Virus record (IMG/VR): IMGVR_UViG_3300032116_000004
Span: 1-64,000 of that record
Reading direction: 5' to 3' (one strand)
DNA: 64,000 nt
Below, in pieces: positions 18,617-50,610 of the stretch (positions are counted from its first letter, which is position 1; the number at the start of each line of letters is the position of its first letter). The notes under the pieces were generated by a model. That model had not been told where the DNA came from. It saw nothing but the letters and a program-made list of their open reading frames with translations, and did no database searches. The position numbers and the translations under genes are program-made.

Positions 18617-19158
18617 AATGTCACGCTGGCACGTGTGCCGATTCCAGGCAATACCCTATGAGGTTTGAGATCGGTATTGACATTGATATAACCTTTGTTA
18701 TTGGCCAACTCTAACTTGTATGGCGGATCCACATGCAAGAATTCGATACCGTGACAGGGATCCTGTTTTGAAGACCAAATGTCAACATAGACTTGATAGG
18801 TAACTATGATGTCTGGTGAATCTGAATGTGTCTGGCAGGCAAAGCCCGGCAAGTCTAGCCAAAATTTCACTATCATGAGATTGAGATCCAATCCAGAGAT
18901 CTGATTCAATGAAGGTATGATATCCAACCCTATCTGTTGTAATCGGGCATGATCCGGGCCCGGTTGCAACATCAGTCTGCGATGGGGTCGTGAAACTGCG
19001 AATTGATTTTGTTCGTTTATCACAATGTCCTGCATCCATGACAATGTTTCGGAGCAAAAACACTCATCCACAAGCCAACAGTTCGGTGCCACTGATTGCA
19101 ATTGACAGACTTGATCATATATCTTGACTTGTTGTGTAGATGTGTTATACTGTGTCAT
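18598..19158 (-). CDS. 2OG-Fe(II) oxygenase superfamily protein
   Basis: FWLD.PGF...HSD, NKGY, PHRV, RAS (HxD..H..R); start set at ATG 19158, 7 nt after TAAATA. Confidence 0.7.
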   Translation of the reverse strand: MTQYNTSTQQVKIYDQVCQLQSVAPNCWLVDECFCSETLSWMQDIVINEQNQFAVSRPHRRLMLQPGPDHARLQQIGLDIIPSLNQISGLDLNLMIVKFWLDLPGFACQTHSDSPDIIVTYQVYVDIWSSKQDPCHGIEFLHVDPPYKLELANNKGYINVNTDLKPHRVLPGIGTRASVTFQYNLV

Positions 19159-21652: not shown

Positions 21653-22902
21653 TGTCTGCGAAATATTTCCCAATCAAAACTGCCACTGCTTGTCAATTAA
21701 AATGGAATTGGTCTACCCTGTATCTACACGATGAAACTACAGCCAGTTGTCATCGCACAGGTTGGAGTCCTTTGACTGTAGAAAATTTTGACGATTTCCA
21801 TAACACCGAGAAAAAAAAACAAGAGCGTATCGCAATGTTGGACGGCCAATGGCCCAAAGAAAGTTGTGGATACTGTAGAGAAATAGAACAGTCGGGCGGG
21901 TTCAGTGATAGGATGTTGCATCTCAATATTCCTGACCTGGTTCCGCCGGAGTTAGGCCATGATCCAACAGCCATTACAGTATCTCCGACAATATTGGAAG
22001 TTTTTTTTAACAACACTTGCAATCTGGCCTGCCTTTATTGTTTGCCAGAATTGAGCAGTAAACTACATCAGGAAAATGTCAAATTTGGTGACTTCATAGC
22101 TGGACATATCAAACTGACGCCAGCACCTCGCCCACAAAACTATCCAGCACTGTTGGAAAAATTTTGGTCCTGGATGGATAAAAATTCTGGATCCTTGCGT
22201 AGGTTCAATGTGCTAGGAGGGGAACCATTCTATCAGGCTGAGTTTGAGAAATTGTTAGAGTTTTTTGAAAATAATCCACACTCCGATCTTGAATTAGGTA
22301 TAGTGACCAATCTAATGGTTTCTCAAGACAAACTAGATAAATTTGTGAAAATATTCCGTTCTTTGCTGGTAAAGAAACATCTCAAGCGCATTGACATAAC
22401 CTGTAGCATCGACTGCTGGGGACCTGAACAAGAATATGTCCGATATGGAGTTGATTTGGCATCATGGGAAAAAAATTTCCTAACTCTATTGACACACAAG
22501 TGGTTGACCATTAATATCAATCAGACTATATCAGTGCTAACTATCAAGACCATGCCTCAACTGTTGGAAAAACTATCATCGTGGAGGAATCAGCATCCTG
22601 TAGGACATTATTTTTCTGCCATCAGTCCACAACCTGGATATCTCATGCCTCATATAGTTGGAAAAGGAATTTTCCAAGAAGATTTTGATCGCATACTAGA
22701 TCTCATGCCAACAGATACCGAACAGGATCAGACATCCCTCAAATATATGCAAGGAATACGAGATCGAATCGAAAATTCTCAACCAGATCTACAATGTAAA
22801 TCTGATCTCAAATTATTCCTTGATGAAAAAGATCGTCGTAGGGGTAATAGTTGGCGCAAAACATTTCCGTGGCTGGTCAAGGAAATAGATAATGTGGTAT
22901 AG
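21649..22902 (+). CDS. radical SAM protein
   Basis: CNLACLYC (CxxxCxxC), GGEPF, VTNL, SID.W...EYVRYG; extra N-terminal Cys cluster (C..W, SCH, C.YC). Confidence 0.88.
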   Translation: MMSAKYFPIKTATACQLKWNWSTLYLHDETTASCHRTGWSPLTVENFDDFHNTEKKKQERIAMLDGQWPKESCGYCREIEQSGGFSDRMLHLNIPDLVPPELGHDPTAITVSPTILEVFFNNTCNLACLYCLPELSSKLHQENVKFGDFIAGHIKLTPAPRPQNYPALLEKFWSWMDKNSGSLRRFNVLGGEPFYQAEFEKLLEFFENNPHSDLELGIVTNLMVSQDKLDKFVKIFRSLLVKKHLKRIDITCSIDCWGPEQEYVRYGVDLASWEKNFLTLLTHKWLTININQTISVLTIKTMPQLLEKLSSWRNQHPVGHYFSAISPQPGYLMPHIVGKGIFQEDFDRILDLMPTDTEQDQTSLKYMQGIRDRIENSQPDLQCKSDLKLFLDEKDRRRGNSWRKTFPWLVKEIDNVV

Positions 22903-27357: not shown

Positions 27358-28081
27358 TGTAACACAGACCATAACCAAAGACGATCTCCTACAGGATCCT
27401 TGCCCGTATTTTTGCATCCATGATGCTCTACCGCAGACATTGTATGATCAGTTGATAGCAGAGTATCCTGAAGCACACATGATGCAGGATGGCAAGACAC
27501 ATTTCCAGGCACGCCGTTATCGTCAGCATGAATTCGTTCCAGGAACTGTGTCTCCATTGTGGCAAGAATTTGTGGCCTATCACAACAGTGTGTCTTTCAA
27601 AAATCGTGTGTTGGATCTTTTTGAACCAGCCCTGGAAAAGTATTATCCAGAGTTTGCCCAAGATCTACGTGATGCAGGAGTATCAGAACGGCATGATGGT
27701 CGCGCTGGCACAGTGCAGATGGAAGTGCAGTTCGTTCTTAACGGTCAGCAAGATACCACAGTGAGGACCACGCATTTGGACAACAGCCGAGAACTGTTTG
27801 CTGGCCTGTTGTATATGCGCAAACCCGAAGACACCAGCGTGGGCGGCGACATCCAGGTGTTCCGCAAACTGGTGCCCGCTCCAGAATACACTGGCATCAG
27901 AGAAGTCAATCCGGATCATGTGGCAGCAGCCGGAACAGTTCCGTATCGTGCCAATACCATGATACTGTTTCTCAACACAGCAGATACCATCCACGGCGTG
28001 ACCCCGCGTATAGGTGCCAACTGTTTGCGCAGATACATCAACATAGACGCACATCAAGATAGGAAATTATTCCGAGTATGA
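27347..28081 (+). CDS. 2OG-Fe(II) oxygenase superfamily protein
   Basis: DP.PYF.I.DALP, THLDN, GLLYMR, GGD, N...F.NT...IHGVTPR, RRYIN. Confidence 0.8.
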   Translation: MHLDVTQTITKDDLLQDPCPYFCIHDALPQTLYDQLIAEYPEAHMMQDGKTHFQARRYRQHEFVPGTVSPLWQEFVAYHNSVSFKNRVLDLFEPALEKYYPEFAQDLRDAGVSERHDGRAGTVQMEVQFVLNGQQDTTVRTTHLDNSRELFAGLLYMRKPEDTSVGGDIQVFRKLVPAPEYTGIREVNPDHVAAAGTVPYRANTMILFLNTADTIHGVTPRIGANCLRRYINIDAHQDRKLFRV

Positions 28082-32013: not shown

Positions 32014-32798
32014 TTGCGATCATAATCATCGGGTAGGCTATGTCCCAAGGCCTTGCGTTTAGAGCCTTTCATGTGATCCATGTATAGGCCCAAGCGACTG
32101 GCGATAAAAGGATGCCCTGGGCCTTTGCCCGGCAGTTCGGGACTGAGATTGTGGAAAGAGGTCTGTCGTTGCGTCTGGAAGTCTTTGCGGATCACGTCAA
32201 ATACAAAACTGTCATGATATTCGCGCAGGCGGAAAAGATCTCCTGTGACATAAAGATCATGCCAACGGTCCATGAAACTGAGCAAATCGGGATGGCGCCG
32301 ATTATAGGCCACCCATCCGCATTCGCTGTGATATTTTTCCCTGCGTCCCAGATAACAGGCCATTGCTGAATCTTCGCATATGGTGCTCAAGAAATTTTCC
32401 GGAACGTCCTGGAAAGTCACTGTGTCTGCATCTAACCATATCACCCAGTCGCTGTCTAGAGTGCGGCAAGCATGGATCACAGCAAAGACCTTGTGGCTGA
32501 ATCTCACTGCATCCCACTTGAAAGCATTGTCTTTGAACGGTACTCCGGTGTCTTTGGCCACCAACCCATTGGCCATGGGATCGTTGCCCCAGCGATTTTT
32601 GAAATTTACCAAATCTGGTGACTGTGCCAACAGATCCAGGATCTTCACACGATCGCTGGGCGATCTGGGCTGGCAATTTTCTGCATATACTATCAGTTCC
32701 ACATCTCCGGGCCAATGGCGATCAAAAGCGTCGATCATGCGCTGGCCATATTGTTTGAGACCCGGGGCATGGAACGTGGTAATTACTGTGTATTTCAT
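31959..32798 (-). CDS. GT-A fold glycosyltransferase
   Basis: VITTF, WDAVRFSHKV, WLDAD, YLGR...SECGW, E.HDS.VFD, DHMKG; TAAATA 7 nt before ATG 32798. Confidence 0.75.
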   Translation of the reverse strand: MKYTVITTFHAPGLKQYGQRMIDAFDRHWPGDVELIVYAENCQPRSPSDRVKILDLLAQSPDLVNFKNRWGNDPMANGLVAKDTGVPFKDNAFKWDAVRFSHKVFAVIHACRTLDSDWVIWLDADTVTFQDVPENFLSTICEDSAMACYLGRREKYHSECGWVAYNRRHPDLLSFMDRWHDLYVTGDLFRLREYHDSFVFDVIRKDFQTQRQTSFHNLSPELPGKGPGHPFIASRLGLYMDHMKGSKRKALGHSLPDDYDRNQGLNSSVGYWQGIFGRR

Positions 32799-36285: not shown

Positions 36286-37458
36286 ATGGGCAAAGACAAC
36301 AAAATATTTTGCACGGCACCATTTACTACTTTACGAATAGAATCTTATAGTGCCTCAATACCTGGCAAATATGATCAGTATGGAGTGATTTTCAAACCGG
36401 GATGTGTGTATGATCCACAGGGTCCTATATCCAGTCTTGACGAATATCTTCAAGGGCAGGAAATGTCCTGGCACAGAAATAACTTGTTGCAAGGATTGCA
36501 ACCACATCCTGGTTGTCATAGATGTTGGAAATCTGAACAAATTGGTCTAGACAGCACTAGAAAACAGTTGTTGAAAAAACCCTATGCCAGTGACCAGATG
36601 GGTATCAAATTGTTAGATGTTTTTTTTGGCAATGTGTGTAACATGGCCTGTTTTATGTGTGATCCTGAATGGTCCAGCAAACATGCCGAAGAAAGTTACC
36701 AATTGGGATTCATAAAGCAAAGAATCGATGTAAAAGACAACACAGACACAGTGTTGGAAACTATAGATCTGCTACCTGATCTCGAGCAGGTCAGTTTCAT
36801 AGGCGGGGAATTTTTCTTATTCAAAAACAACGTCAAAATTTGCAACAAGATCATTGAAAAAAATCTCGAAGCCAGGATCGTAACCAATGCCAGCGTATTG
36901 ACTGATGAACTTTGGAAAAAGCTTACAGAGATCAAAGCAATTGAAATGCAAATCAGCATAGATGCTATAGAAGAAACCTATGCTCTTATGCGTTACCCTT
37001 ACACCTGGGATACCTTGATCGGCAATTACCAAAAACTGAAACAACTATCAAACATCAAACTCAATTTTCATGTGGTCACACAGGTGCTTAATATTCAAAA
37101 TCTGCATGCCACTTTGGACTGGGCCAATCGAGAACGCACACCAATTTCTTTGCACAATCTATCGCCCGGATGCTGGTCTTGGGACATACTTACCGTTTCT
37201 GAAAAAATCGAACTGAAACAGTATCTACAGGATTGCAATCAAAGATTTAGATTGATATCCAAGCAGACGCAGTGGATACAAGATCTGATTGATGGGTTAG
37301 ACAAGGTTAAATTCAGTCCGCAATGGCGGCAACAGTTTGTGGATAGATTTTCCAAACTTATGAAACATAGGAAAGTTGATATACCGCAAATCCAAAAACA
37401 TTTGGGTATTTTCCGTAGCCTGTTTGACGAGGTCCTAACGGCAATGGATGCACATTAA
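36286..37458 (+). CDS. radical SAM protein
   Basis: FCTAPF, PGC, C.RC, CNMACFMC...WSS, GGEFF, VTNA, SIDA...MRYP; TAAGTA 5 nt before ATG 36286. Confidence 0.85.
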   Translation: MGKDNKIFCTAPFTTLRIESYSASIPGKYDQYGVIFKPGCVYDPQGPISSLDEYLQGQEMSWHRNNLLQGLQPHPGCHRCWKSEQIGLDSTRKQLLKKPYASDQMGIKLLDVFFGNVCNMACFMCDPEWSSKHAEESYQLGFIKQRIDVKDNTDTVLETIDLLPDLEQVSFIGGEFFLFKNNVKICNKIIEKNLEARIVTNASVLTDELWKKLTEIKAIEMQISIDAIEETYALMRYPYTWDTLIGNYQKLKQLSNIKLNFHVVTQVLNIQNLHATLDWANRERTPISLHNLSPGCWSWDILTVSEKIELKQYLQDCNQRFRLISKQTQWIQDLIDGLDKVKFSPQWRQQFVDRFSKLMKHRKVDIPQIQKHLGIFRSLFDEVLTAMDAH

Positions 37459-43872: not shown

Positions 43873-44858
43873 TCGACATATTTTCTTATCTACCAGCCAA
43901 ACGCAAAAGCACAAGTTCTGGCTGGATTTCATTCAATGCTCCGTGTTGTGTTCACAATGGTGAAAGCCAGGATCGACGACAGCGCGGTGGAATCAAGGCC
44001 ACTGACCAAGGTTGGAGTTTCCACTGTTTCAATTGCGGATTCACTGCCAGCTTCATCCTGGGTCGCAATCTTTCATTCAAGGCTCGCAGACTGTTGCAAT
44101 GGCTTAATGTTCCACAACAAGAAATAGAATATATAAATCTCGAAAGCCTCAAACATCGAAACATCCAAGGCATACTGGATGATCGACAGCGCACTGCCAA
44201 TGTGGTGCAGGGCATCGAGTTTGAAGATCGAGAACTGCCGGAAGAATTCGCATTGGTGGATCGCGACATGTCAGTGCATTGGCAGTATCTCAGAGATCGT
44301 TGTGTGCCCGAGGATTATCCCATAGGTATGATCCATGGCCGGCCTGATGACAAATTCAGTCGTAGGCAAGGTGTGATCATACCGTTTACCTATGATGGAC
44401 GCATAGTAGGACACACACGTAGATTTTTTGATGATCATAATCCTCGCTACGTCCACGACATGCAACAGGGCTATGTGTTTGGCACAGATCTACAGCGACC
44501 AGATTGGCAGCATGTGATCGTGGTGGAAGGCATATTTGATGCTCTCAGCATCGGTGGATTGGCAGTATTGCATGCTGAAATCAATGATACCCAAGCGAGA
44601 CTGATACGCAGTATTGGTCGAGAAGTCACAGTGGTGCCCGATCAAGACAAGGCCGGTCTCAAGTTGATAGATTGTGCTATAGAACTGGGTTGGGCAGTGA
44701 GCATACCAGACTGGCCAGCGGATGTCAAGGACGTTAACGATGCAGTGATACGCCAAGGACGATTGGCCACGCTGTTGAATATTTTCCAGCATCGATGCAC
44801 CAGTAAAATAAAAATTGAAATGGCTCGGAAGAATCTCATGAGGAAACTCCATGTCTAG
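43869..44858 (+). CDS. DNA primase (gp61-like, zinc finger plus TOPRIM)
   Basis: N-terminal CC..HCFNC zinc domain, IIPF, VVEGIFDA, PDQDKAG, KDVND. Confidence 0.88.
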   Translation: MIDIFSYLPAKRKSTSSGWISFNAPCCVHNGESQDRRQRGGIKATDQGWSFHCFNCGFTASFILGRNLSFKARRLLQWLNVPQQEIEYINLESLKHRNIQGILDDRQRTANVVQGIEFEDRELPEEFALVDRDMSVHWQYLRDRCVPEDYPIGMIHGRPDDKFSRRQGVIIPFTYDGRIVGHTRRFFDDHNPRYVHDMQQGYVFGTDLQRPDWQHVIVVEGIFDALSIGGLAVLHAEINDTQARLIRSIGREVTVVPDQDKAGLKLIDCAIELGWAVSIPDWPADVKDVNDAVIRQGRLATLLNIFQHRCTSKIKIEMARKNLMRKLHV

Positions 44859-45558
44859 ATTGATCGTGTATGGCGACAGTTATAGCACACCAGGATTCTG
44901 TGTAGATGTCAAGGATTCTTGGTGGGGCTTAATGGCTGCTGCCTTGCAAGTTGATAGTGTAGAAAACTACAGTTGGCCAGGAAACAACGTAGATAGCATA
45001 TCACATCTCATAGTGGCTGGTTCTGGATTTAGTCCTAACGATTATGTAATAGTGGGTGTGCCCCCTATCGAGAGATTTACTGTGTATGATTATGATGGTA
45101 TGGCTCCTAGTTATCATAGATTTTTTGGCAATCTAGAACCCATAGATCAACCATGCTTACGAGAACATGATGGGCTCAGGCAAGTCACTACTCATCAGCT
45201 GGGCCAAGGCTATGTAATGTCATGGAATCGTAGTTGGCAAGAAGCACAGGCTCTTAGAGAATTATTTTTATTGACTAGATATATCCAAGGATGGACTAGC
45301 AATTATCTCATCGTGAATCTCGCCGAACCATTCCAGCCCAAGACCGAGTGGCCAACACTGGCCAGTATACAGAGAAGATTTTTAGCAGATCCGCACAGTA
45401 TCCTGTTTGAAGATACCTACTTCAGCACTAACAAAAATGTCCATCGTCCCGTGGACTTTGATACTCACGGATGGCACGGTCACTATGGATCTGCGGGCAA
45501 TCATCATTGGTATGAAAAAGTATTGTGTCCTCGCATGCAGGAGTTAGGATGGCTATGA
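44851..45558 (+). CDS. SGNH/GDSL hydrolase-like protein
   Basis: VYGDSYS, NYSWPGNN, R near IVG, GHYG..GN. Confidence 0.6.
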   Translation: MSRLIVYGDSYSTPGFCVDVKDSWWGLMAAALQVDSVENYSWPGNNVDSISHLIVAGSGFSPNDYVIVGVPPIERFTVYDYDGMAPSYHRFFGNLEPIDQPCLREHDGLRQVTTHQLGQGYVMSWNRSWQEAQALRELFLLTRYIQGWTSNYLIVNLAEPFQPKTEWPTLASIQRRFLADPHSILFEDTYFSTNKNVHRPVDFDTHGWHGHYGSAGNHHWYEKVLCPRMQELGWL

Positions 45559-46244
45559 ATTATTTTGGCGGCTGTAGCATCACCATGGGTGCAGGTTTCG
45601 AGAGCCAACAAAATGATCCCAGGATCTATCCCAATCTCATTGGCCATGCAGACAACGATGCCGAAGGTGGATCCAGCAATCTAAAAATTTTTACCCGAGC
45701 AGCCAAGGCTTTATTGGATCGTCGACATGATCGATATTTTGTGCAATGGAGTGCTTTGCACAGACACTGGGTTTACCCCAGCGCCAACCAGGGATTTTAT
45801 ATCGGTGCCGACACTGATAGCAATCTAATAGATAAAAAGTTTGTGGCCCAATATCAATTGCTTAATCACGATTATAGTAATATAATGTCATTGATAGACT
45901 ATACCAGGATACTGCAACAGATGTCCGATGATGCTGGAAAAGATATATGGTTTATCAATGGCATGATTCCTTGGACCCAAGACATGTTGACCAATCAATC
46001 TCACAGTGACTATGCCAAGACCTTATATCAAGATCTAGATGATGATCAAACTCGAGATTTCAGTGAACGGTTGCGCAATAATCTTGAATTGATAGACTGG
46101 ACACAATGGGTAAACCCGTGGCACAGCATCGTGGATCTCAAACTGGACCATGCACCGTTGGATGATCATCCGGGCGCTGCCACGCATAGAAAAATCGCTG
46201 ACATGATACAACAACACATAGATACATCGAGAGAAACCCAATGA
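45555..46244 (+). CDS. SGNH/GDSL hydrolase-like protein
   Basis: GGCSITMG, GGSSN, VQWS...R, D.HPG..TH..IA. Confidence 0.65.
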   Translation: MNYFGGCSITMGAGFESQQNDPRIYPNLIGHADNDAEGGSSNLKIFTRAAKALLDRRHDRYFVQWSALHRHWVYPSANQGFYIGADTDSNLIDKKFVAQYQLLNHDYSNIMSLIDYTRILQQMSDDAGKDIWFINGMIPWTQDMLTNQSHSDYAKTLYQDLDDDQTRDFSERLRNNLELIDWTQWVNPWHSIVDLKLDHAPLDDHPGAATHRKIADMIQQHIDTSRETQ

Positions 46245-47638
46245 AAGATTATTCCGTAGAAGTCCAAAAGTTGTTCCTGGAGTTTATGATGCAGGACGCA
46301 CAGAGTTACGTGCGAGTGCAGAACATATTCAATGAAGAAAACTTTGATCGCAGCCTGCGTAGTGCCGCGAAGTTTATCCGAGAACACTGTGATCAACACA
46401 AAACTTTGCCTGATCGCAAACAGGTTCGAGCAGTGACCAATGTTGACCTACAAGAAATACCCGATATCAATGAAGGGCATCTCGACTGGTTCATGGAAGA
46501 GTTTGAATCATTCACTCGTCGACAAGAATTGGAACGTGCGATCCTTAAGTCGGCGGACCTTTTGGAAAAGGGCAATTTTGATCCTGTGGAGAAGTTGATT
46601 AAGGATGCCGTGCAAATATCATTGACCAAGGATCTGGGCACAGATTACTTTGAAGATCCGCGATCGAGACTGCTGGCCTTGAAAAATAATAATGGACAGA
46701 ACTCTACTGGATGGCCTGCCCTGGACAAATTGCTGTATGGTGGATTCAACCGAGGTGAATTGCAGATTTTCGCAGGAGGTTCAGGTTCTGGCAAGAGTTT
46801 GTTCATGCAGAACTTGGCAGTGAACTGGGCACAGGCCGGGCTCAACGGTTGTTACATCACGCTGGAACTGTCAGAAGGTCTTTGTTCCATGCGCATCGAC
46901 TCCATGATGACCAATACGTCTAGCAAAGAAATTTTTCGAGATATCGATACAGTGGAAATGAAAGTCAAGATGATGCAGAAGAAGGCCGGCGCCTTGCAGA
47001 TCAAATACATGCCAGCACAGAGCACAGTGAATGATATCCGTGCATATCTCAAAGAACTGCAAGTGAAGACAAAGAAACGTGTGGATTTTTTATGCGTAGA
47101 TTATCTAGACTTGATCATGCCGGTGAGTGCCAAAGTTAGCCCCAATGATTTATTCGTCAAAGACAAGTATGTTTCAGAAGAACTGCGCAACTTGGCTAAA
47201 GAACTCAATGTATTGTTTGTCACTGCTTCGCAGTTGAATCGTGCGGCAGTGGAAGAGATTGAGTTCGATCATAGCCATATATCGGGTGGTATTTCCAAGA
47301 TCAACACAGCAGATAATGTGTTTGGTATCTTCACAAGTCGAGCCATGCGTGAACGTGGTCGCTATCAGATACAGTTGATGAAGACTCGTTCATCGAGTGG
47401 AGTGGGACAGAAGGTAGATTTAGAGTTTGACATTGAAAGCCTGCGTATCAGAGATTTAGGCGAAGACCAACAGCAAAGTTCTGGATTTGTCAAGAAACCC
47501 AACATCTACGAATCAATCAAGGCCAAGTCTACTATGAAGGATGACAACAGTGAACCAGCTGAAGATGTTGGCAAGGTCACAGCCGATGTGCAATCAAACA
47601 AACTCAAACAGTTATTAGGACAAATCAAACAGTCATGA
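46241..47638 (+). CDS. replicative DNA helicase (DnaB/gp41-like)
   Basis: STGW..LD..LYGG, AGGSGSGKS, ITLELSE, VDYLDL, ASQLNR, KTR. Confidence 0.93.
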   Translation: MKDYSVEVQKLFLEFMMQDAQSYVRVQNIFNEENFDRSLRSAAKFIREHCDQHKTLPDRKQVRAVTNVDLQEIPDINEGHLDWFMEEFESFTRRQELERAILKSADLLEKGNFDPVEKLIKDAVQISLTKDLGTDYFEDPRSRLLALKNNNGQNSTGWPALDKLLYGGFNRGELQIFAGGSGSGKSLFMQNLAVNWAQAGLNGCYITLELSEGLCSMRIDSMMTNTSSKEIFRDIDTVEMKVKMMQKKAGALQIKYMPAQSTVNDIRAYLKELQVKTKKRVDFLCVDYLDLIMPVSAKVSPNDLFVKDKYVSEELRNLAKELNVLFVTASQLNRAAVEEIEFDHSHISGGISKINTADNVFGIFTSRAMRERGRYQIQLMKTRSSSGVGQKVDLEFDIESLRIRDLGEDQQQSSGFVKKPNIYESIKAKSTMKDDNSEPAEDVGKVTADVQSNKLKQLLGQIKQS

Positions 47639-48243
47639 TAGATCAGGATTTGATCGAGAACAACAAGAAACATCTAGCGTCTTGCATCTCCAACAGACTG
47701 TCTACCCCTATAGCAGATTTGTATCAGATAACAGATGTCTTAGATCTTGCGATATTACAAAAACTCAATCAGTATGTTTCATCGGTTTCCAATGACAAAT
47801 GGCAAACAGTGGAAGGTCAAGAAACTCTTCCTAGACAAAAAATCACTTGGGATTTTGATACAGTGATAGAAGAGTTGCATGAAATATTTGATTCTGCGAC
47901 AGATCTGATCAATGAAACGTTTACAGACCCCTATAAACATTTCTGGGGAGTATCGCTCTGGAAAGATGAAGCGGGATATGAAATTGGTTGGCACACTGAT
48001 AATCCTGACATCGATGTTGCCATGCAAATATATCTCTACACTTCATCTGGGGTGGGAACAATCTTTGGATCGGAACACACTCCGATCCTGATACCCAGTG
48101 AGCACAACTCAGGGTATCTAATCCAACATGATAGAACAGACAAAATCTCTCATAGGTCAGAGAGTGTAGTTTCAGCCGGAACTACCCGCTACATCTTATA
48201 CGCTGTGTGGAGTCGCATCTCCAAGCATCTTACCGATACCTAA
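47635..48243 (+). CDS. 2OG-Fe(II) oxygenase superfamily protein
   Basis: LWKD..GY.IGWHTDNPDI, QIYL, GT, NSGY, SH, RY.LY. Confidence 0.75.
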   Translation: MIDQDLIENNKKHLASCISNRLSTPIADLYQITDVLDLAILQKLNQYVSSVSNDKWQTVEGQETLPRQKITWDFDTVIEELHEIFDSATDLINETFTDPYKHFWGVSLWKDEAGYEIGWHTDNPDIDVAMQIYLYTSSGVGTIFGSEHTPILIPSEHNSGYLIQHDRTDKISHRSESVVSAGTTRYILYAVWSRISKHLTDT

Positions 48244-49026
48244 CGATTGTCCTGTTTTATCTTTGGCCACATGTATTATTTTTGTTGGCAAGATATCTAA
48301 AGTCCTACAAATTTCTTGATGTTGACCGCCATAGGAATTCCATAGATAATCTCTTTCAAAATTATCAATCCAATAGCAACCGATAGAAGTGATCACTGTG
48401 TTGGTATCTTTGTAGTAGTCGTTGAATATTGTCACAGAATCCATGGATTTTTGCCTGCTGAATCGTAGTCCTACTCGATTCCATTGTAGGCTCAATTTGC
48501 TGAGACTCACACCAATGCTTTTGATGCAGGGATGATTGAGATCTAGATGGATATCTTTGGCAGTGACAATCCATGCCATATCGATGTGGATATCAATCAT
48601 CCTCTGTTCGCAGATTCTTAGAACATCCTCCCACTCCGGTCTGACATCGCAAAAAGTCCAATGGGGCATGGTGATGATCAATGGCTTGTTGGGCTCAAGG
48701 TCATTGACTTCTACTCCATGTTTGCCCATTAGGGTATAATAAGCATATTCGTTCTTGAGTATCTGAAATCCATTCCATCCATGCTTTTGGACAAAACTTT
48801 CTATATAATGTGTGCATCCCATGGTCACGTCCACATGAGGGAAAGCGTCCCACCCTTGTATATCGTTGATCTTGGTTGATGTGAACCATTCTTTTGCCAT
48901 CGGGAAAAAGTCTTGATAGGTGCTTTGTCTTTGAGCATCGTGATACCATGACTGTCGCAATGATATCATTTTTTGATCTTTCACAGGAAAGAGAGTTTTT
49001 GTTGTTTTAGTTAATTGCCATGTCAT
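48196..49026 (-). CDS. PLP-dependent transferase-like (fold type I) protein
   Basis: G.T..IE, EYAYY, IHIDMAW, SLSK (putative PLP Lys), RVGLR. Confidence 0.55.
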   Translation of the reverse strand: MTWQLTKTTKTLFPVKDQKMISLRQSWYHDAQRQSTYQDFFPMAKEWFTSTKINDIQGWDAFPHVDVTMGCTHYIESFVQKHGWNGFQILKNEYAYYTLMGKHGVEVNDLEPNKPLIITMPHWTFCDVRPEWEDVLRICEQRMIDIHIDMAWIVTAKDIHLDLNHPCIKSIGVSLSKLSLQWNRVGLRFSRQKSMDSVTIFNDYYKDTNTVITSIGCYWIDNFERDYLWNSYGGQHQEICRTLDILPTKIIHVAKDKTGQSLGIGKMLGDATPHSV

Positions 49027-49032
49027 GATGAT

Positions 49033-49503
49033 TTACTCAAATTGTGAGATAATAAATTTATAAAAAGGACTGAAAAATTCAAACTTCCATGTCCCATTGT
49101 GACTTAACCAAGTTTCTCCGATGATTTTTTCTTCCAACGCAACTCCAGCATCTATCTGTTGTTGTTTCCATACTGTGGAATAGATAGGTTCAAACCAACT
49201 GCGGTGCCAGATGAGATTCTGCACATCGATACCATCAATACAAACTTGATTCAAGATAACATATTGATCGAACCGAGATCCATTGTTATCAATCACGCAT
49301 TGATCATCTGTTTTGTTAAATCTCTTTAAAGATACTGTGTGTGGGCGATCAAATTCTAGATCATCCTCAAAGGATAATTTGCATTGCTTTTGATCTAGAG
49401 TTTTTGTGCATTTGATACGATCATCAACGGAAATTTCTATCATGGGAAATTTATCCCAAAATTCTGATCTTATGTCGAATTCAAAACGTATTCGTTCTTT
49501 CAT
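49033..49503 (-). CDS. hypothetical protein
   Basis: 156-aa ORF co-oriented in minus-strand operon. Confidence 0.7.
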   Translation of the reverse strand: MKERIRFEFDIRSEFWDKFPMIEISVDDRIKCTKTLDQKQCKLSFEDDLEFDRPHTVSLKRFNKTDDQCVIDNNGSRFDQYVILNQVCIDGIDVQNLIWHRSWFEPIYSTVWKQQQIDAGVALEEKIIGETWLSHNGTWKFEFFSPFYKFIISQFE

Positions 49504-50556
49504 TTACCACTCCGTTATATAATAGATGCCGCTGTCCCCGCGCTCAGGCCAATAATCCTCCCGGCCCCCTGATCGATGTATATCACTACAAACGCAGTGT
49601 ATTCCGGCATCCCAAAAATATCTAGATTGAAATTCTACCAAATGCGGAGTGATACCTAGAGATTCAAAATATTGAAAAGCCATTTCATCGTAAGCGCCAC
49701 ATATGATATTTTTTTCGTCTACTACCAACATATTGACTTCAAAAACAGTTTCTTGCGGATTGCCTAACCATTGTTCTGCCACGGCCATTATATCTGCGTT
49801 GAAATGCCCGTAGTCTACTCCGGGTAGATACCACTTGTCGGCTATACCAACGTGTTGGAGATTTTTATATGTGGTGTCTGGCAGATGGAACACAGACCAT
49901 CCTGGAAAACTTGAGTCATAGACCTTTCTATAATGAGACGTAAAAATATGCCCTGGCCTAATCGGACAAAAAACTCCGTCGTTATGATCTCCAGTGCCAC
50001 TGAGATGCACTCTATAATCTTTGGCTAATTCCTGTGCTACCAGATACGTGTATTTTTTTGATTCTGGTATATTTGGCTGATAATCTATCAGTATATCTTT
50101 TCCGGCCCGCACCACGCTGGCAAAAATCATCCAGGCCCATGGTTCTGGTGTAGCACGGTCAATGACATGTATTTTTTGTCCTGCTTGGCGATAATCATCT
50201 ACAGCACGTTGATAGGGATTTACTTCGGACGTGTATTGAGGCATGAGATGCAAAGTATCTCCTAGTGTCAGTGCTATGTCGCATGGACTTACCGGTGGTT
50301 TAAGCAAATGATCATGTTCGTCTAAAAAGTCGTCTATACGATCGAATTGAGGCCTGACTACTGTGACACCTAATTTTTCCAATGTGTCTGTTAGATTGTC
50401 AAAATCTTTGTTGGTAATTTCAGTGATTTTTGCAAAAATATCGTGGGATTTGTTGCCAAGATGCTGGTAAAAATCTGCAGGATAAGTGCCACCTACCCAT
50501 ACTTCTTTCAATGGTTGCCATTGGCTGTGACTTGAAACTTTACGTTGACTTATCAT
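49504..50556 (-). CDS. amidinotransferase family protein (glycine/inosamine-phosphate amidinotransferase-like)
   Basis: S...WQPLKEVWVG, GV.VVRP, HNDG, VNMLVVDE, C-terminal WDAGIHC (catalytic Cys); TAAATA 7 nt before ATG. Confidence 0.8.
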   Translation of the reverse strand: MISQRKVSSHSQWQPLKEVWVGGTYPADFYQHLGNKSHDIFAKITEITNKDFDNLTDTLEKLGVTVVRPQFDRIDDFLDEHDHLLKPPVSPCDIALTLGDTLHLMPQYTSEVNPYQRAVDDYRQAGQKIHVIDRATPEPWAWMIFASVVRAGKDILIDYQPNIPESKKYTYLVAQELAKDYRVHLSGTGDHNDGVFCPIRPGHIFTSHYRKVYDSSFPGWSVFHLPDTTYKNLQHVGIADKWYLPGVDYGHFNADIMAVAEQWLGNPQETVFEVNMLVVDEKNIICGAYDEMAFQYFESLGITPHLVEFQSRYFWDAGIHCVCSDIHRSGGREDYWPERGDSGIYYITEW

Positions 50557-50610
50557 ATAAGGATATTTACAGATACGTAAAATCTACTAAATAATTTAAA
50601 GGTTCGGATC

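What the first reader, a model, noticed from the sequence alone, without database searches (positions are those of the whole stretch)
47635..50556. Amidinotransferase - unknown - PLP-fold operon converging on a 2OG oxygenase
Seen: a minus-strand three-gene unit behind a leaderless TAAATA, visibly A/T-richer than its flanks. It encodes an amidinotransferase (HNDG, GIHC; the usual PRD is PCD), a 156-aa unknown and a short PLP-fold-like protein (DMAW, SLSK, RVG). Its end overlaps the 3' end of a 2OG oxygenase. Established: oxidation, transamination then amidino transfer is how StrB1-type pathways install guanidino groups. Inference: the phage may add a cationic guanidino/amidino group to a sugar, base or protein.
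Basis: partly seen in the sequence, partly recalled or inferred. Interest (0 to 1): 0.6.

Follow-up and report, generated by a model that had tools for sequence, protein, structure and literature searches.

The report
Phage oxidise–aminate–guanidinylate gene module
An uncultured 316-kb freshwater phage carries a tight, widely conserved four-gene set (an iron/2-oxoglutarate oxygenase, a new short vitamin-B6 aminotransferase with a sugar-binding-like partner, and an arginine-type amidinotransferase) that most likely turns a C-H or C-OH position of a sugar-like substrate into a positively charged guanidino group, a modification not yet described for any phage.

Summary
Four ORFs lie at the stated coordinates, and the region has unusually low GC (0.40 against 0.473 genome-wide).

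- **amt350** matches only amidinotransferases in the PDB (AGAT, profile E 1.8e-17). Its Cys, His and both guanidinium-binding Asp are invariant; the third triad Asp is not conserved.
- **g276** (the "PLP-fold" protein) is a compact class-I aminotransferase fold (Z 16.9). It has the full PLP-binding residue set and founds a 270–310-aa family (406 representatives).
- **g156** (the "unknown") is a CBM60-like β-sandwich (Z 10.9).
- **g202** is a P4H-type 2OG oxygenase with HxD…H and Arg conserved.

Evidence that the genes work together:
- In 38 non-redundant viral loci, g276 has g156 beside it in 33, g202 in 31 and an amidinotransferase in 20.
- The commonest order is g156>g276>amt>g202.
- Linked amidinotransferases come from at least two separate clades.
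- The short PLP domain is also found fused to a PhyH oxygenase and to radical-SAM enzymes.

The same genome holds two more amidinotransferase paralogues, both inside sugar-nucleotide clusters.

I read this as an oxidation, transamination and amidino-transfer tailoring module, probably acting on a carbohydrate-like substrate. Both substrate and product are unproven.

The parts
49504..50556 (-). amt350: divergent amidinotransferase of the AGAT/StrB1 superfamily (phrog_25854), first gene of the minus-strand unit
   Evidence: No Pfam or NCBIfam hit. PDB phmmer gives AGAT at 4.8e-9. The family profile gives AGAT 1.8e-17, SxtG 1.8e-14, HsvA 6.7e-14 and StrB1 4.3e-11, and no hydrolase of the superfamily. 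Invariant in 29 sequences: D93 (= AGAT D170), H191 and D193 (= H303, D305), C321 (= C407). AGAT D254 aligns to the variable column I144.
49033..49503 (-). g156: stand-alone CBM60/CBM36-like beta-sandwich, the near-constant upstream partner of the PLP enzyme
   Evidence: No Pfam or PHROG hit. AF2 model pLDDT 95. Foldseek: CBM60 2xfd/2xhh at E 3e-4. VIA-align: 2xhh Z 10.9, rmsd 3.2, 116 of 119 residues aligned, next best Z 5.9. The nearest named Atlas cluster by features is CBM60, 0.85, a lead only. It lies directly upstream of g276 on the same strand in 33 of 38 non-redundant loci.
48196..49026 (-). g276: compact (276 aa) fold-type-I, class-I-like PLP-dependent enzyme, probably an aminotransferase; member of a new short family
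   Evidence: No direct Pfam or PDB sequence hit. AF2 pLDDT 92. Foldseek: MalY, C-S lyases, aromatic aminotransferases, NifS and CobD at E about 4e-7. VIA-align Z 16.9-14.5 over residues 6-273 against class I/II aminotransferases. 406 cluster representatives, mostly 270-310 aa. G70, P121, D149, S174, S176, K177, R184 and G186 are at least 90% conserved in 118 representatives. 35 of 118 hit PF00155.
47635..48243 (+). g202: small Fe(II)/2-oxoglutarate oxygenase (2OG-FeII_Oxy_3, P4H-like), convergent with g276 and overlapping it by 48 nt
   Evidence: No direct Pfam hit. Atlas features 0.95 and structure TM 0.76 to PF13640/PF13661 clusters. H120, D122 and H173 are invariant and R185 is present in all full-length homologues. 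It lies beside g276 in 31 of 38 non-redundant loci, mostly co-directional.
50557..50610 (.). 54-bp divergent intergenic region between amt350 (-) and the structural gene g81 (+); holds the TAAATA hexamer
   Evidence: Sequence read. Promoter-like matches are not above shuffled expectation. No Rfam family.

Best explanation
**What it is.** The four genes form one accessory tailoring module. It sits in a variable island between the DnaB helicase and the first structural genes of an uncultured 316-kb freshwater phage.

**Proposed mechanism.**
1. g202 (Fe/2OG oxygenase) oxidises a C-H or CH-OH position of the substrate to a carbonyl.
2. g276 (short class-I-type PLP enzyme), working with its CBM60-like partner g156, transaminates that carbonyl to a primary amine. 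If glutamate is the amino donor, this step also regenerates the 2-oxoglutarate that g202 consumes.
3. amt350 transfers an amidino group from L-arginine, through a Cys321 thiouronium intermediate, to the new amine. This gives a guanidinium group.

**Proposed substrate.** Most likely a carbohydrate or cyclitol-like molecule, either free, nucleotide-activated or already part of a glycan.

**Shown here:** the fold and family of each protein, conservation of the cofactor and catalytic residues, and the genomic linkage.

**Inferred:** the order of the steps, the amino and amidino donors, the carbohydrate nature of the substrate, and a physical g156-g276 complex.
For: **Enzyme identities.**
- amt350 matches only amidinotransferases, with C321, H191, D193 and D93 invariant.
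- g276 has a class-I aminotransferase fold with the D149 / S-x-S-K177 / R184 constellation, conserved in at least 90% of 118 representatives; 35 of 118 reach PF00155.
- g202 has HxD...H plus Arg.
- g156 is CBM60-like, Z 10.9 against a next best of 5.9.

**Linkage.**
- In 38 non-redundant IMG/VR loci with adequate flanks, g276 is accompanied by g156 in 33, g202 in 31 and an amidinotransferase in 20.
- The commonest arrangement is the co-directional g156>g276>amt>g202, which places amt inside the operon.
- Amidinotransferases linked to g276 fall in at least two separate clades with 100% support, each nested among unlinked ones. Strongly supported branches force at least 4 changes of the label, so recruitment was repeated.

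**Fusions.**
- The short PLP domain is fused to a PhyH-type 2OG oxygenase (P0352).
- It is fused in both orders to radical-SAM domains (P0336, P0362, and P0344 with 36 members). These pair it directly with oxidising enzymes.

**Carbohydrate context.**
- The same genome has two further amidinotransferase paralogues.
- One sits beside a 4,6-dehydratase/epimerase, a DegT sugar aminotransferase and a carbamoyltransferase.
- The other is StrB1-like (E 2.7e-63) and lies next to a UDP-glucose/GDP-mannose dehydrogenase-family gene.
- In cyanophage S-SCSM2R a distant homologue lies between KdsA/KdsB and two 2OG oxygenases (PMC12801897).
- In one relative (L016) a GNAT acetyltransferase follows the g156-g276 pair where others have amt, which fits alternative capping of an amine.

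**Established chemistry.** The streptidine pathway runs dehydrogenase, then aminotransferase, then StrB1. This is textbook knowledge, not tested here.
Against: - No product, substrate or activity is known for any member, and no cultured phage carries g156 or g276.
- g276 resembles class I/II amino-acid aminotransferases and C-S lyases, not the DegT family that normally aminates sugars. Fold alone cannot distinguish a transaminase from a lyase or a decarboxylase.
- The AGAT triad Asp254 aligns to a variable column (I144) in the amt350 type, so full catalytic competence is unproven.
- amt350 orthologues occur without g156, g276 or g202 in close relatives (L009, L010, L022). Conversely, 18 of 38 core loci lack any amidinotransferase within 3.5 kb.
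- The CBM60 resemblance is structural only. Its Ca2+ and sugar ligands were not checked.
- Hydroxylation alone gives an alcohol, not a ketone, so a second oxidation or attack on a carbinol carbon has to be assumed.
- No kinase or glycosyltransferase is part of the module.
Confidence: 0.45

Rival explanations
1. The module makes or alters a free arginine-derived or other amino-acid-derived metabolite rather than a sugar. g202 would hydroxylate an amino acid, g276 would act as an ordinary alpha-amino-acid aminotransferase, cyclase or lyase, and amt350 would use or make a guanidino acid.
For: The structural neighbours of g276 are amino-acid enzymes. They include the arginine-modifying MppP, MppQ, RohP and Plu4 at Z 15.3-16.2, tied with many others. 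All characterised amidinotransferases use L-arginine. Viral AMG surveys report guanidinoacetate/creatine genes (PMC11360552). The commonest neighbour of the wider phage amidinotransferase family has weak similarity to arginyl-tRNA-protein transferase.
Against: No invariant C-terminal Arg equivalent to the alpha-carboxylate-binding Arg of class I aminotransferases was recognised. The near-constant partner is CBM-like. The paralogues sit among sugar-nucleotide genes. g202 is P4H-like, not the VioC/TauD type known for free arginine.
Confidence: 0.2
2. amt350 is functionally independent of g156-g276-g202. The genes share only a recombination hot spot (a variable island next to DnaB) and do not feed one another.
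For: amt350 orthologues stand alone beside DnaB in L009, L010 and L022. 51 of 56 non-redundant amidinotransferase-centred loci lack g276. 18 of 38 core loci lack amt. The island is GC-poor and variable in content.
Against: In the commonest arrangement amt lies between g276 and g202 in a tightly packed co-directional operon (9 clusters). At least two phylogenetically separate amidinotransferase clades are attached to the core, one of them (19 rows) exclusively so. In the window the amt350 coding region abuts the g156 start codon with no gap.
Confidence: 0.15
3. The module modifies proteins, for example virion proteins. A P4H-like hydroxylase would act on Pro or Lys side chains, followed by further tailoring that could include amidination of a lysine-type amine.
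For: g202 belongs to the prolyl-4-hydroxylase-like PF13640 group. In cyanophage S-SCSM2R the amidinotransferase ORF266 and a 2OG oxygenase (ORF269) were both detected in purified virions (PMC12801897). The module lies directly next to structural genes.
Against: A PLP transaminase has no obvious role on a protein side chain. No protein-directed amidinotransferase is known. The CBM-like partner and the sugar context of the paralogues point elsewhere.
Confidence: 0.1
4. The module hypermodifies phage DNA bases, as in the PLP- and radical-SAM-dependent thymidine hypermodification pathways, ending in a guanidino side chain.
For: The module sits beside replication genes (primase, DnaB). Known thymidine hypermodification pathways use PLP enzymes and radical-SAM enzymes (PMC5889632, PMC8989533, listed). 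A cationic group on DNA would plausibly block restriction.
Against: No thymidylate-synthase-like hydroxymethylase (PF00303) and no TGT/DpdA (PF01702) were found in the 91%-complete genome. No kinase or glycosylase-fold transferase is in the module. The module is located next to terminase, not replication genes, in L023.
Confidence: 0.08

Closest known systems
Streptidine branch of streptomycin biosynthesis (StrI dehydrogenase, StsC aminotransferase, StrB1 amidinotransferase)
   Same: The same three-step logic: oxidise a carbinol, transaminate, then transfer an amidino group from arginine. amt350 is a sequence relative of StrB1 (profile E 4.3e-11). A StrB1-like paralogue (E 2.7e-63) is in the same genome.
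   Different: The oxidant is an Fe/2OG oxygenase, not an NAD dehydrogenase. The PLP enzyme is a 276-aa class-I-like protein, not a DegT/StsC type. It comes with a CBM-like partner. No kinase is present. The host is a phage and the substrate is unknown.
L-arginine:glycine amidinotransferase (AGAT, PDB 1jdw) with SxtG, CyrA and HsvA
   Same: These are the best sequence matches. The nucleophile Cys, the His-x-Asp motif and the N-terminal guanidinium-binding Asp are conserved.
   Different: Identity is only about 20-25%. There is no Pfam hit. The triad Asp254 position is variable. The protein is shorter (350 aa). The family is confined to viral metagenomic contigs (phrog_25854, unknown function).
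Class I/II PLP aminotransferases and C-S lyases (MalY, PatB, kynurenine aminotransferase, HisC/CobD)
   Same: The fold aligns over the whole protein (Z about 15-17). It shares the Asp-x-Ala-aromatic, Ser-x-Ser-Lys and Arg-x-Gly cofactor motifs.
   Different: About 100 residues shorter. No recognisable alpha-carboxylate Arg. It forms a distinct family of about 270-310-aa proteins that is nearly always preceded by a CBM60-like gene and is sometimes fused to radical-SAM or PhyH domains.
Cyanophage S-SCSM2R amidinotransferase clusters (ORF266-269 and ORF305-309) and the Campylobacter phage CP220/CPt10 radical-SAM plus amidinotransferase cluster
   Same: These phages also combine an amidinotransferase with 2OG oxygenases, or with a fold-I aminotransferase and radical-SAM enzymes, beside sugar genes. 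The paralogue-2 cluster of this genome has the same make-up.
   Different: Those clusters lack g156 and g276 (and no tblastn match). Their function is also unknown; the authors called them 'antibiotic synthesis genes'.

Membership tests
Amidinotransferase (AGAT/StrB1 branch of the guanidino-group-modifying superfamily) | Significant sequence similarity to characterised amidinotransferases rather than to hydrolases of the superfamily | tested here: met
   Single sequence: AGAT 4.8e-9. Family profile: AGAT 1.8e-17, SxtG, HsvA, StrB1. No ADI, DDAH or agmatine deiminase chain was listed.
Amidinotransferase (AGAT/StrB1 branch of the guanidino-group-modifying superfamily) | Nucleophilic Cys near the C-terminus (AGAT C407) | tested here: met
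   C321 in GIHC is invariant in 29 sequences and aligned to AGAT GFHC.
Amidinotransferase (AGAT/StrB1 branch of the guanidino-group-modifying superfamily) | Catalytic His and the two guanidinium-binding Asp (AGAT H303, D305, D170) | tested here: met
   H191, D193 and D93 are invariant. PCD in the window protein is PRD in more distant members.
Amidinotransferase (AGAT/StrB1 branch of the guanidino-group-modifying superfamily) | Third member of the Cys-His-Asp triad (AGAT D254, StrB1 D179) | tested here: not met
   D254 aligns to I144, a variable column (I/T/V/E/S...). The Asp is present in the L015/L024-type and in the StrB1-like paralogue. This rests on alignment only; no 3D model of amt350 could be made.
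Amidinotransferase (AGAT/StrB1 branch of the guanidino-group-modifying superfamily) | Curated family model (Pfam PF02274, NCBIfam) | tested here: not met
   No hit at E <= 0.1 (Pfam) or <= 1 (NCBIfam). Only phrog_25854, of unknown function, matched.
Amidinotransferase (AGAT/StrB1 branch of the guanidino-group-modifying superfamily) | Arginine-dependent amidino transfer to an amine | not testable with these tools
   Needs an enzyme assay.
Fold-type I PLP enzymes, class I/II aminotransferase group (PF00155) | Fold of the large and small domains | tested here: met
   AF2 pLDDT 92. Foldseek E 3.7e-7. VIA-align Z 16.9, with 261 residues aligned over 6-273.
Fold-type I PLP enzymes, class I/II aminotransferase group (PF00155) | Schiff-base Lys in S-x-S-K, Asp to the pyridine N, phosphate-binding Arg and Gly loop | tested here: met
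   K177, S174, S176, D149, R184, G186 and G70 are at least 90% conserved across 118 representatives down to about 20% identity. Their equivalence to AspAT D222, K258 and R266 is from my own knowledge of that sequence.
Fold-type I PLP enzymes, class I/II aminotransferase group (PF00155) | Curated Pfam model above its gathering score | tested here: inconclusive
   The window protein has no hit. 35 of 118 family representatives hit PF00155 at E <= 0.01, best 1.8e-9; three of the four scanned individually (P0352, P0347, P0319) scored 24-28 bits, above the 19.7-bit cut-off.
Fold-type I PLP enzymes, class I/II aminotransferase group (PF00155) | Alpha-carboxylate-binding Arg of the small domain and the usual 350-400-aa size | tested here: not met
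   The protein is 276 aa. No invariant Arg lies in the C-terminal 50 residues.
Fe(II)/2-oxoglutarate oxygenase (2OG-FeII_Oxy_3, PF13640) | HxD...H iron triad and 2OG-binding Arg | tested here: met
   H120, D122 and H173 are invariant in 7 sequences. R185 is present in all 6 full-length ones.
Fe(II)/2-oxoglutarate oxygenase (2OG-FeII_Oxy_3, PF13640) | Double-stranded beta-helix fold or family-model hit | tested here: inconclusive
   No direct Pfam hit. The Atlas's own model has TM 0.76 to a PF13640/PF13661 cluster, with feature score 0.95. I made no model of my own.
CBM60/CBM36 calcium-dependent carbohydrate-binding modules | Beta-sandwich fold match | tested here: met
   2xhh: Z 10.9, 116 of 119 residues aligned, rmsd 3.2, next best Z 5.9. 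Foldseek E 3e-4.
CBM60/CBM36 calcium-dependent carbohydrate-binding modules | Ca2+ and sugar-ligand residues; PF16841 sequence membership | not tested
   No Pfam hit. Ligand residues could not be mapped without coordinates. The Atlas feature score of 0.85 is a lead only.

The most novel reading that the evidence does not exclude
Phages of several lineages carry a self-contained minimal pathway. A 2OG oxygenase and a previously unrecognised short PLP aminotransferase with a lectin-like subunit exchange 2-oxoglutarate and glutamate, and an amidinotransferase finishes the job. Together they write a guanidinium group onto a glycan or sugar nucleotide that ends up on the virion, on DNA or on the host surface. 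This would be a new class of cationic phage modification and the first biological role for the large phage amidinotransferase family (phrog_25854).
Probability: 0.2. Interest if true: 0.85.

Novelty: new variant of a known kind. Interest (0 to 1): 0.66.

Why it matters
Amidinotransferase-like genes are common in viral metagenomes: more than 570 relatives were confirmed in IMG/VR. They are annotated either as 'unknown' or, misleadingly, as glycine amidinotransferase or 'antibiotic synthesis' genes.

This module gives that family a concrete, testable biochemical setting. It also defines a new short PLP-enzyme family with a lectin-like partner.

If the product is a guanidinylated sugar, glycan, nucleotide or protein, it would add a new cationic chemistry to phage-host conflict, for example masking of DNA or virions, or remodelling of receptors. 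It would also supply compact enzymes for installing amines and guanidines at unactivated positions.

The same genome carries three amidinotransferases, 14 radical-SAM matches and sugar-nucleotide genes. That suggests a large, unexplored biosynthetic investment by freshwater jumbo phages.

Tried and rejected
**Searches that found nothing.**
- Direct Pfam, NCBIfam and PHROG scans of the four proteins gave nothing useful apart from phrog_25854 for amt350.
- PDB sequence searches with g276, g202 and the g276 family profile gave only chance-level rows: Cas12i2 and flavodoxin, E > 0.01.
- tblastn of g276, g156 and a distant g276 homologue against 50,697 GenBank phage records found no match.
- Rfam found no family, and the repeats were only short chance-sized ones plus a 25-nt inverted repeat inside g276.

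**Jobs that could not run.**
It gives no verdict.
- A genome-contig scan with the broad alignment A5 failed for lack of a conserved stretch, so cellular homologues were not surveyed.

**Expression and promoter.**
- No RNA run holds the region, so expression is unknown.
- The promoter/terminator scan was not above shuffled expectation.

**DNA-modification reading.**
- It was looked for and not supported: no ThyA-like gene and no TGT/DpdA gene in the genome.

**Other checks.**
- I looked for a g156 domain fused to the PLP domain among the 150 listed representatives and found none.

Full report
**1. What is in the sequence**

The window is the first 64 kb of a 315,778-bp IMG/VR virus record, estimated 91% complete. 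Near-identical DNA occurs in lake and freshwater metagenomes of 17 studies.

ORFs at the reported place:
- g202: 47635-48243 (+).
- g276: 48196-49026 (-).
- g156: 49033-49503 (-).
- amt350: 49504-50556 (-).

The minus-strand genes are packed with 0-nt and 6-nt gaps. g276 and g202 converge and overlap by 48 nt.

To the left lie primase, two unknown genes and a DnaB helicase. To the right lie a small virion protein (phrog_11854), g226 and a DUF6267 protein.

The 2.9-kb stretch has GC 0.401, against 0.473 for the genome. This is the lowest 1.3% of windows.

The TAAATA hexamer exists, but promoter-like sites are not enriched.

**2. What each protein is**

None of the four hits Pfam or NCBIfam directly.

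*amt350*
- It matches only amidinotransferases in the PDB: AGAT 4.8e-9 as a single sequence, 1.8e-17 with a 29-sequence profile, followed by SxtG, HsvA and StrB1.
- D93, H191, D193 and C321 are invariant. They align with AGAT D170, H303, D305 and C407.
- AGAT D254, the third triad residue, aligns with a variable column (I144). The Asp is kept in a second subfamily (L015/L024 type) and in the StrB1-like paralogue.

*g276*
- It has 181 close homologues and a confident model, pLDDT 92.
- The model aligns over its whole length to class I/II aminotransferases and C-S lyases: Foldseek E about 4e-7; VIA-align Z 16.9-14.5.
- An exhaustive profile search found 406 cluster representatives, mostly 270-310 aa.
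- In 118 of them, G70, P121, D149, S174, S176, K177, R184 and G186 are at least 90% conserved. This is the PLP-binding constellation.
- 35 of the 118 hit PF00155.
- It is therefore a genuine but unusually short fold-type-I PLP enzyme family.

*g156*
- It gives a pLDDT-95 beta-sandwich.
- Its one outstanding structural match is the calcium-dependent carbohydrate-binding module CBM60/36: Z 10.9, 116 of 119 residues aligned, next best Z 5.9.

*g202*
- It is a P4H-like Fe/2OG oxygenase. Atlas features score 0.95 and TM is 0.76 to PF13640 clusters.
- H120, D122, H173 and R185 are conserved.

**3. Are the genes a unit?**

Close relatives (66-74% identity) keep amt-g156-g276. Two relatives have amt350 alone.

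More distant jumbo-phage contigs carry DnaB-g156-g276-amt'-g202 on one strand, or g156-g276(-g202) elsewhere, for example next to terminase.

A systematic survey of IMG/VR gave these results.

| Loci surveyed | Result |
|---|---|
| 38 non-redundant g276 loci with at least 1.8 kb on both sides | g156 nearby in 33, always directly upstream on the same strand |
| same 38 loci | g202 nearby in 31 |
| same 38 loci | an amidinotransferase nearby in 20 |
| same 38 loci | commonest order g156>g276>amt>g202 (9 clusters) |
| 56 non-redundant amidinotransferase-centred loci | 51 lack g276 |

The amidinotransferase family is thus much broader than the module.

A tree of 102 amidinotransferases places the g276-linked ones in at least two separate clades with 100% support. 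One clade holds six linked rows plus L009. The other holds 19 rows, all linked. Each is nested among unlinked sequences, and at least four label changes are forced. Repeated recruitment of different amidinotransferases to the same core is the strongest argument for a shared pathway.

Independent support for the oxidant-PLP pairing comes from fusion proteins:
- PhyH (a 2OG oxygenase) fused to the short PLP domain.
- Radical SAM fused to the short PLP domain, in both orders. One of these fusions has 36 members and sits in runs of radical-SAM genes.

**4. Context that bears on the substrate**

The genome has two more amidinotransferase paralogues.
- Paralogue 2 (L025:7750-8805) lies with an epimerase/4,6-dehydratase, a DegT sugar aminotransferase, a NodU-type carbamoyltransferase and four consecutive radical-SAM genes.
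- Paralogue 3 (L026:7232-8152) is StrB1-like (E 2.7e-63). A UDP-glucose/GDP-mannose dehydrogenase-family gene lies two genes upstream.

Published phage genomes show the same themes without explanation:
- S-SCSM2R has an amidinotransferase next to KdsA/KdsB and 2OG oxygenases. Both the amidinotransferase and an oxygenase were found in virions.
- CP220/CPt10 carry radical-SAM clusters with an amidinotransferase.

No ThyA-like gene and no TGT gene is present. This speaks against the known routes to base hypermodification.

**5. Most likely mechanism**

1. Oxidation by g202.
2. Transamination by g276 with g156.
3. Amidino transfer from arginine by amt350, giving a guanidinium group.

If glutamate is the amino donor, the transaminase regenerates the oxygenase's 2-oxoglutarate. 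This coupling is my inference.

The carbohydrate assignment rests on two things: the CBM-like partner and the sugar-nucleotide setting of the paralogues. It is the weakest link.

Rival readings are kept open, with reasons given in their sections: a free amino-acid product, a protein target, a DNA target, and an independent amt350.

**6. Comparison and novelty**

The logic is that of streptidine biosynthesis, but every component differs:
- an Fe/2OG oxidant instead of an NAD dehydrogenase;
- a 276-aa class-I-like PLP enzyme with a lectin-like partner instead of a DegT enzyme;
- a divergent amidinotransferase lacking the canonical triad Asp.

No cultured phage in GenBank has g156 or g276. The paper searches found no description of the module.

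I rate it a new variant of a known kind of pathway, built partly from unrecognised families.

**7. Limits**

- There are no biochemical data and no evidence of expression.
- The complex test could not be run.
- Cellular genomes were not surveyed.
- The co-occurrence counts depend on my HMMs (E <= 1e-5) and on a 3.5-kb neighbourhood.

Noticed in passing
L025:7750-8805 (genome 247752-248798, outside the window) and L025:1920-15976: A second amidinotransferase paralogue (30% identical to amt350; AGAT 1.1e-15). It sits in a cluster with an NAD epimerase/4,6-dehydratase, a DegT/DnrJ sugar aminotransferase, a NodU-type carbamoyltransferase and four consecutive radical-SAM/SPASM genes. This is the same make-up as the unexplained clusters of cyanophage S-SCSM2R and Campylobacter phages CP220/CPt10.
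   Followed up: partly
L026:7232-8152 (genome 85234-86139, outside the window): A third paralogue, closely StrB1-like (inosamine-phosphate amidinotransferase, E 2.7e-63). A UDP-glucose/GDP-mannose dehydrogenase-family gene lies two genes upstream. UvdE, a HODM-like protein and an isocitrate-lyase-family gene lie downstream. A StrB1-like gene also lies about 3 kb from the g156-g276 pair in contig L016.
   Followed up: partly
whole genome; in the window at 22006-22350 and 36622-37125: 14 radical-SAM matches in one phage genome (8 above the Pfam cut-off). NifU-like and IscA-like Fe-S assembly genes lie a few kb to the right of the module, at roughly window 56.7-57.4 kb (mapped from L018).
   Followed up: no
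window 44851-45558 and 45525-46244: The two unknown genes between primase and DnaB begin with GDS- and GGCS-type motifs reminiscent of SGNH/GDSL esterases. No library hit; not tested further.
   Followed up: no
window 18655-19023 (-), 27767-28036 (+), 32313-32483 (-): There is a truncated g202-like open frame, a second weak 2OG-FeII_Oxy_3 match and a weak glycosyltransferase-2 match elsewhere in the window.
   Followed up: no
L022:8017-9800; L009, L010; L016:8837-9394: The slot between DnaB and the first structural gene is a variable island. Relatives carry amt350 alone, or amt350 plus a 255-aa unknown and a radical-SAM/SPASM protein. In L016, where the g156-g276 pair lies at a different genomic site, a GNAT acetyltransferase follows it in place of an amidinotransferase.
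   Followed up: partly
L135:4219-4956 (-), L142:3978-4571 (+) and 30 or so further amidinotransferase loci: In the wider phage amidinotransferase family (more than 570 IMG/VR relatives) two neighbours recur most often: a protein of about 165 aa with no known family, and one of about 143 aa with weak similarity to the C-terminal domain of arginyl-tRNA-protein transferase (E 1.2e-4, below the cut-off). They occur in 33 and 32 of 81 loci.
   Followed up: partly
P0344 (L187:6001-8100), P0336, P0362, P0352, P0355: The short PLP domain occurs fused to radical-SAM domains (in both orders) and to a PhyH oxygenase. In P0355 it follows an N-terminal region with a DGSHR motif that looks ParB/Srx-like by eye.
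   Followed up: partly
window 48530-48602: A 25-nt inverted repeat (84% complementary, 23-nt spacer) lies inside the g276 coding sequence, over the IDIHIDMAW codons. It is probably a by-product of the repeated codons.
   Followed up: no
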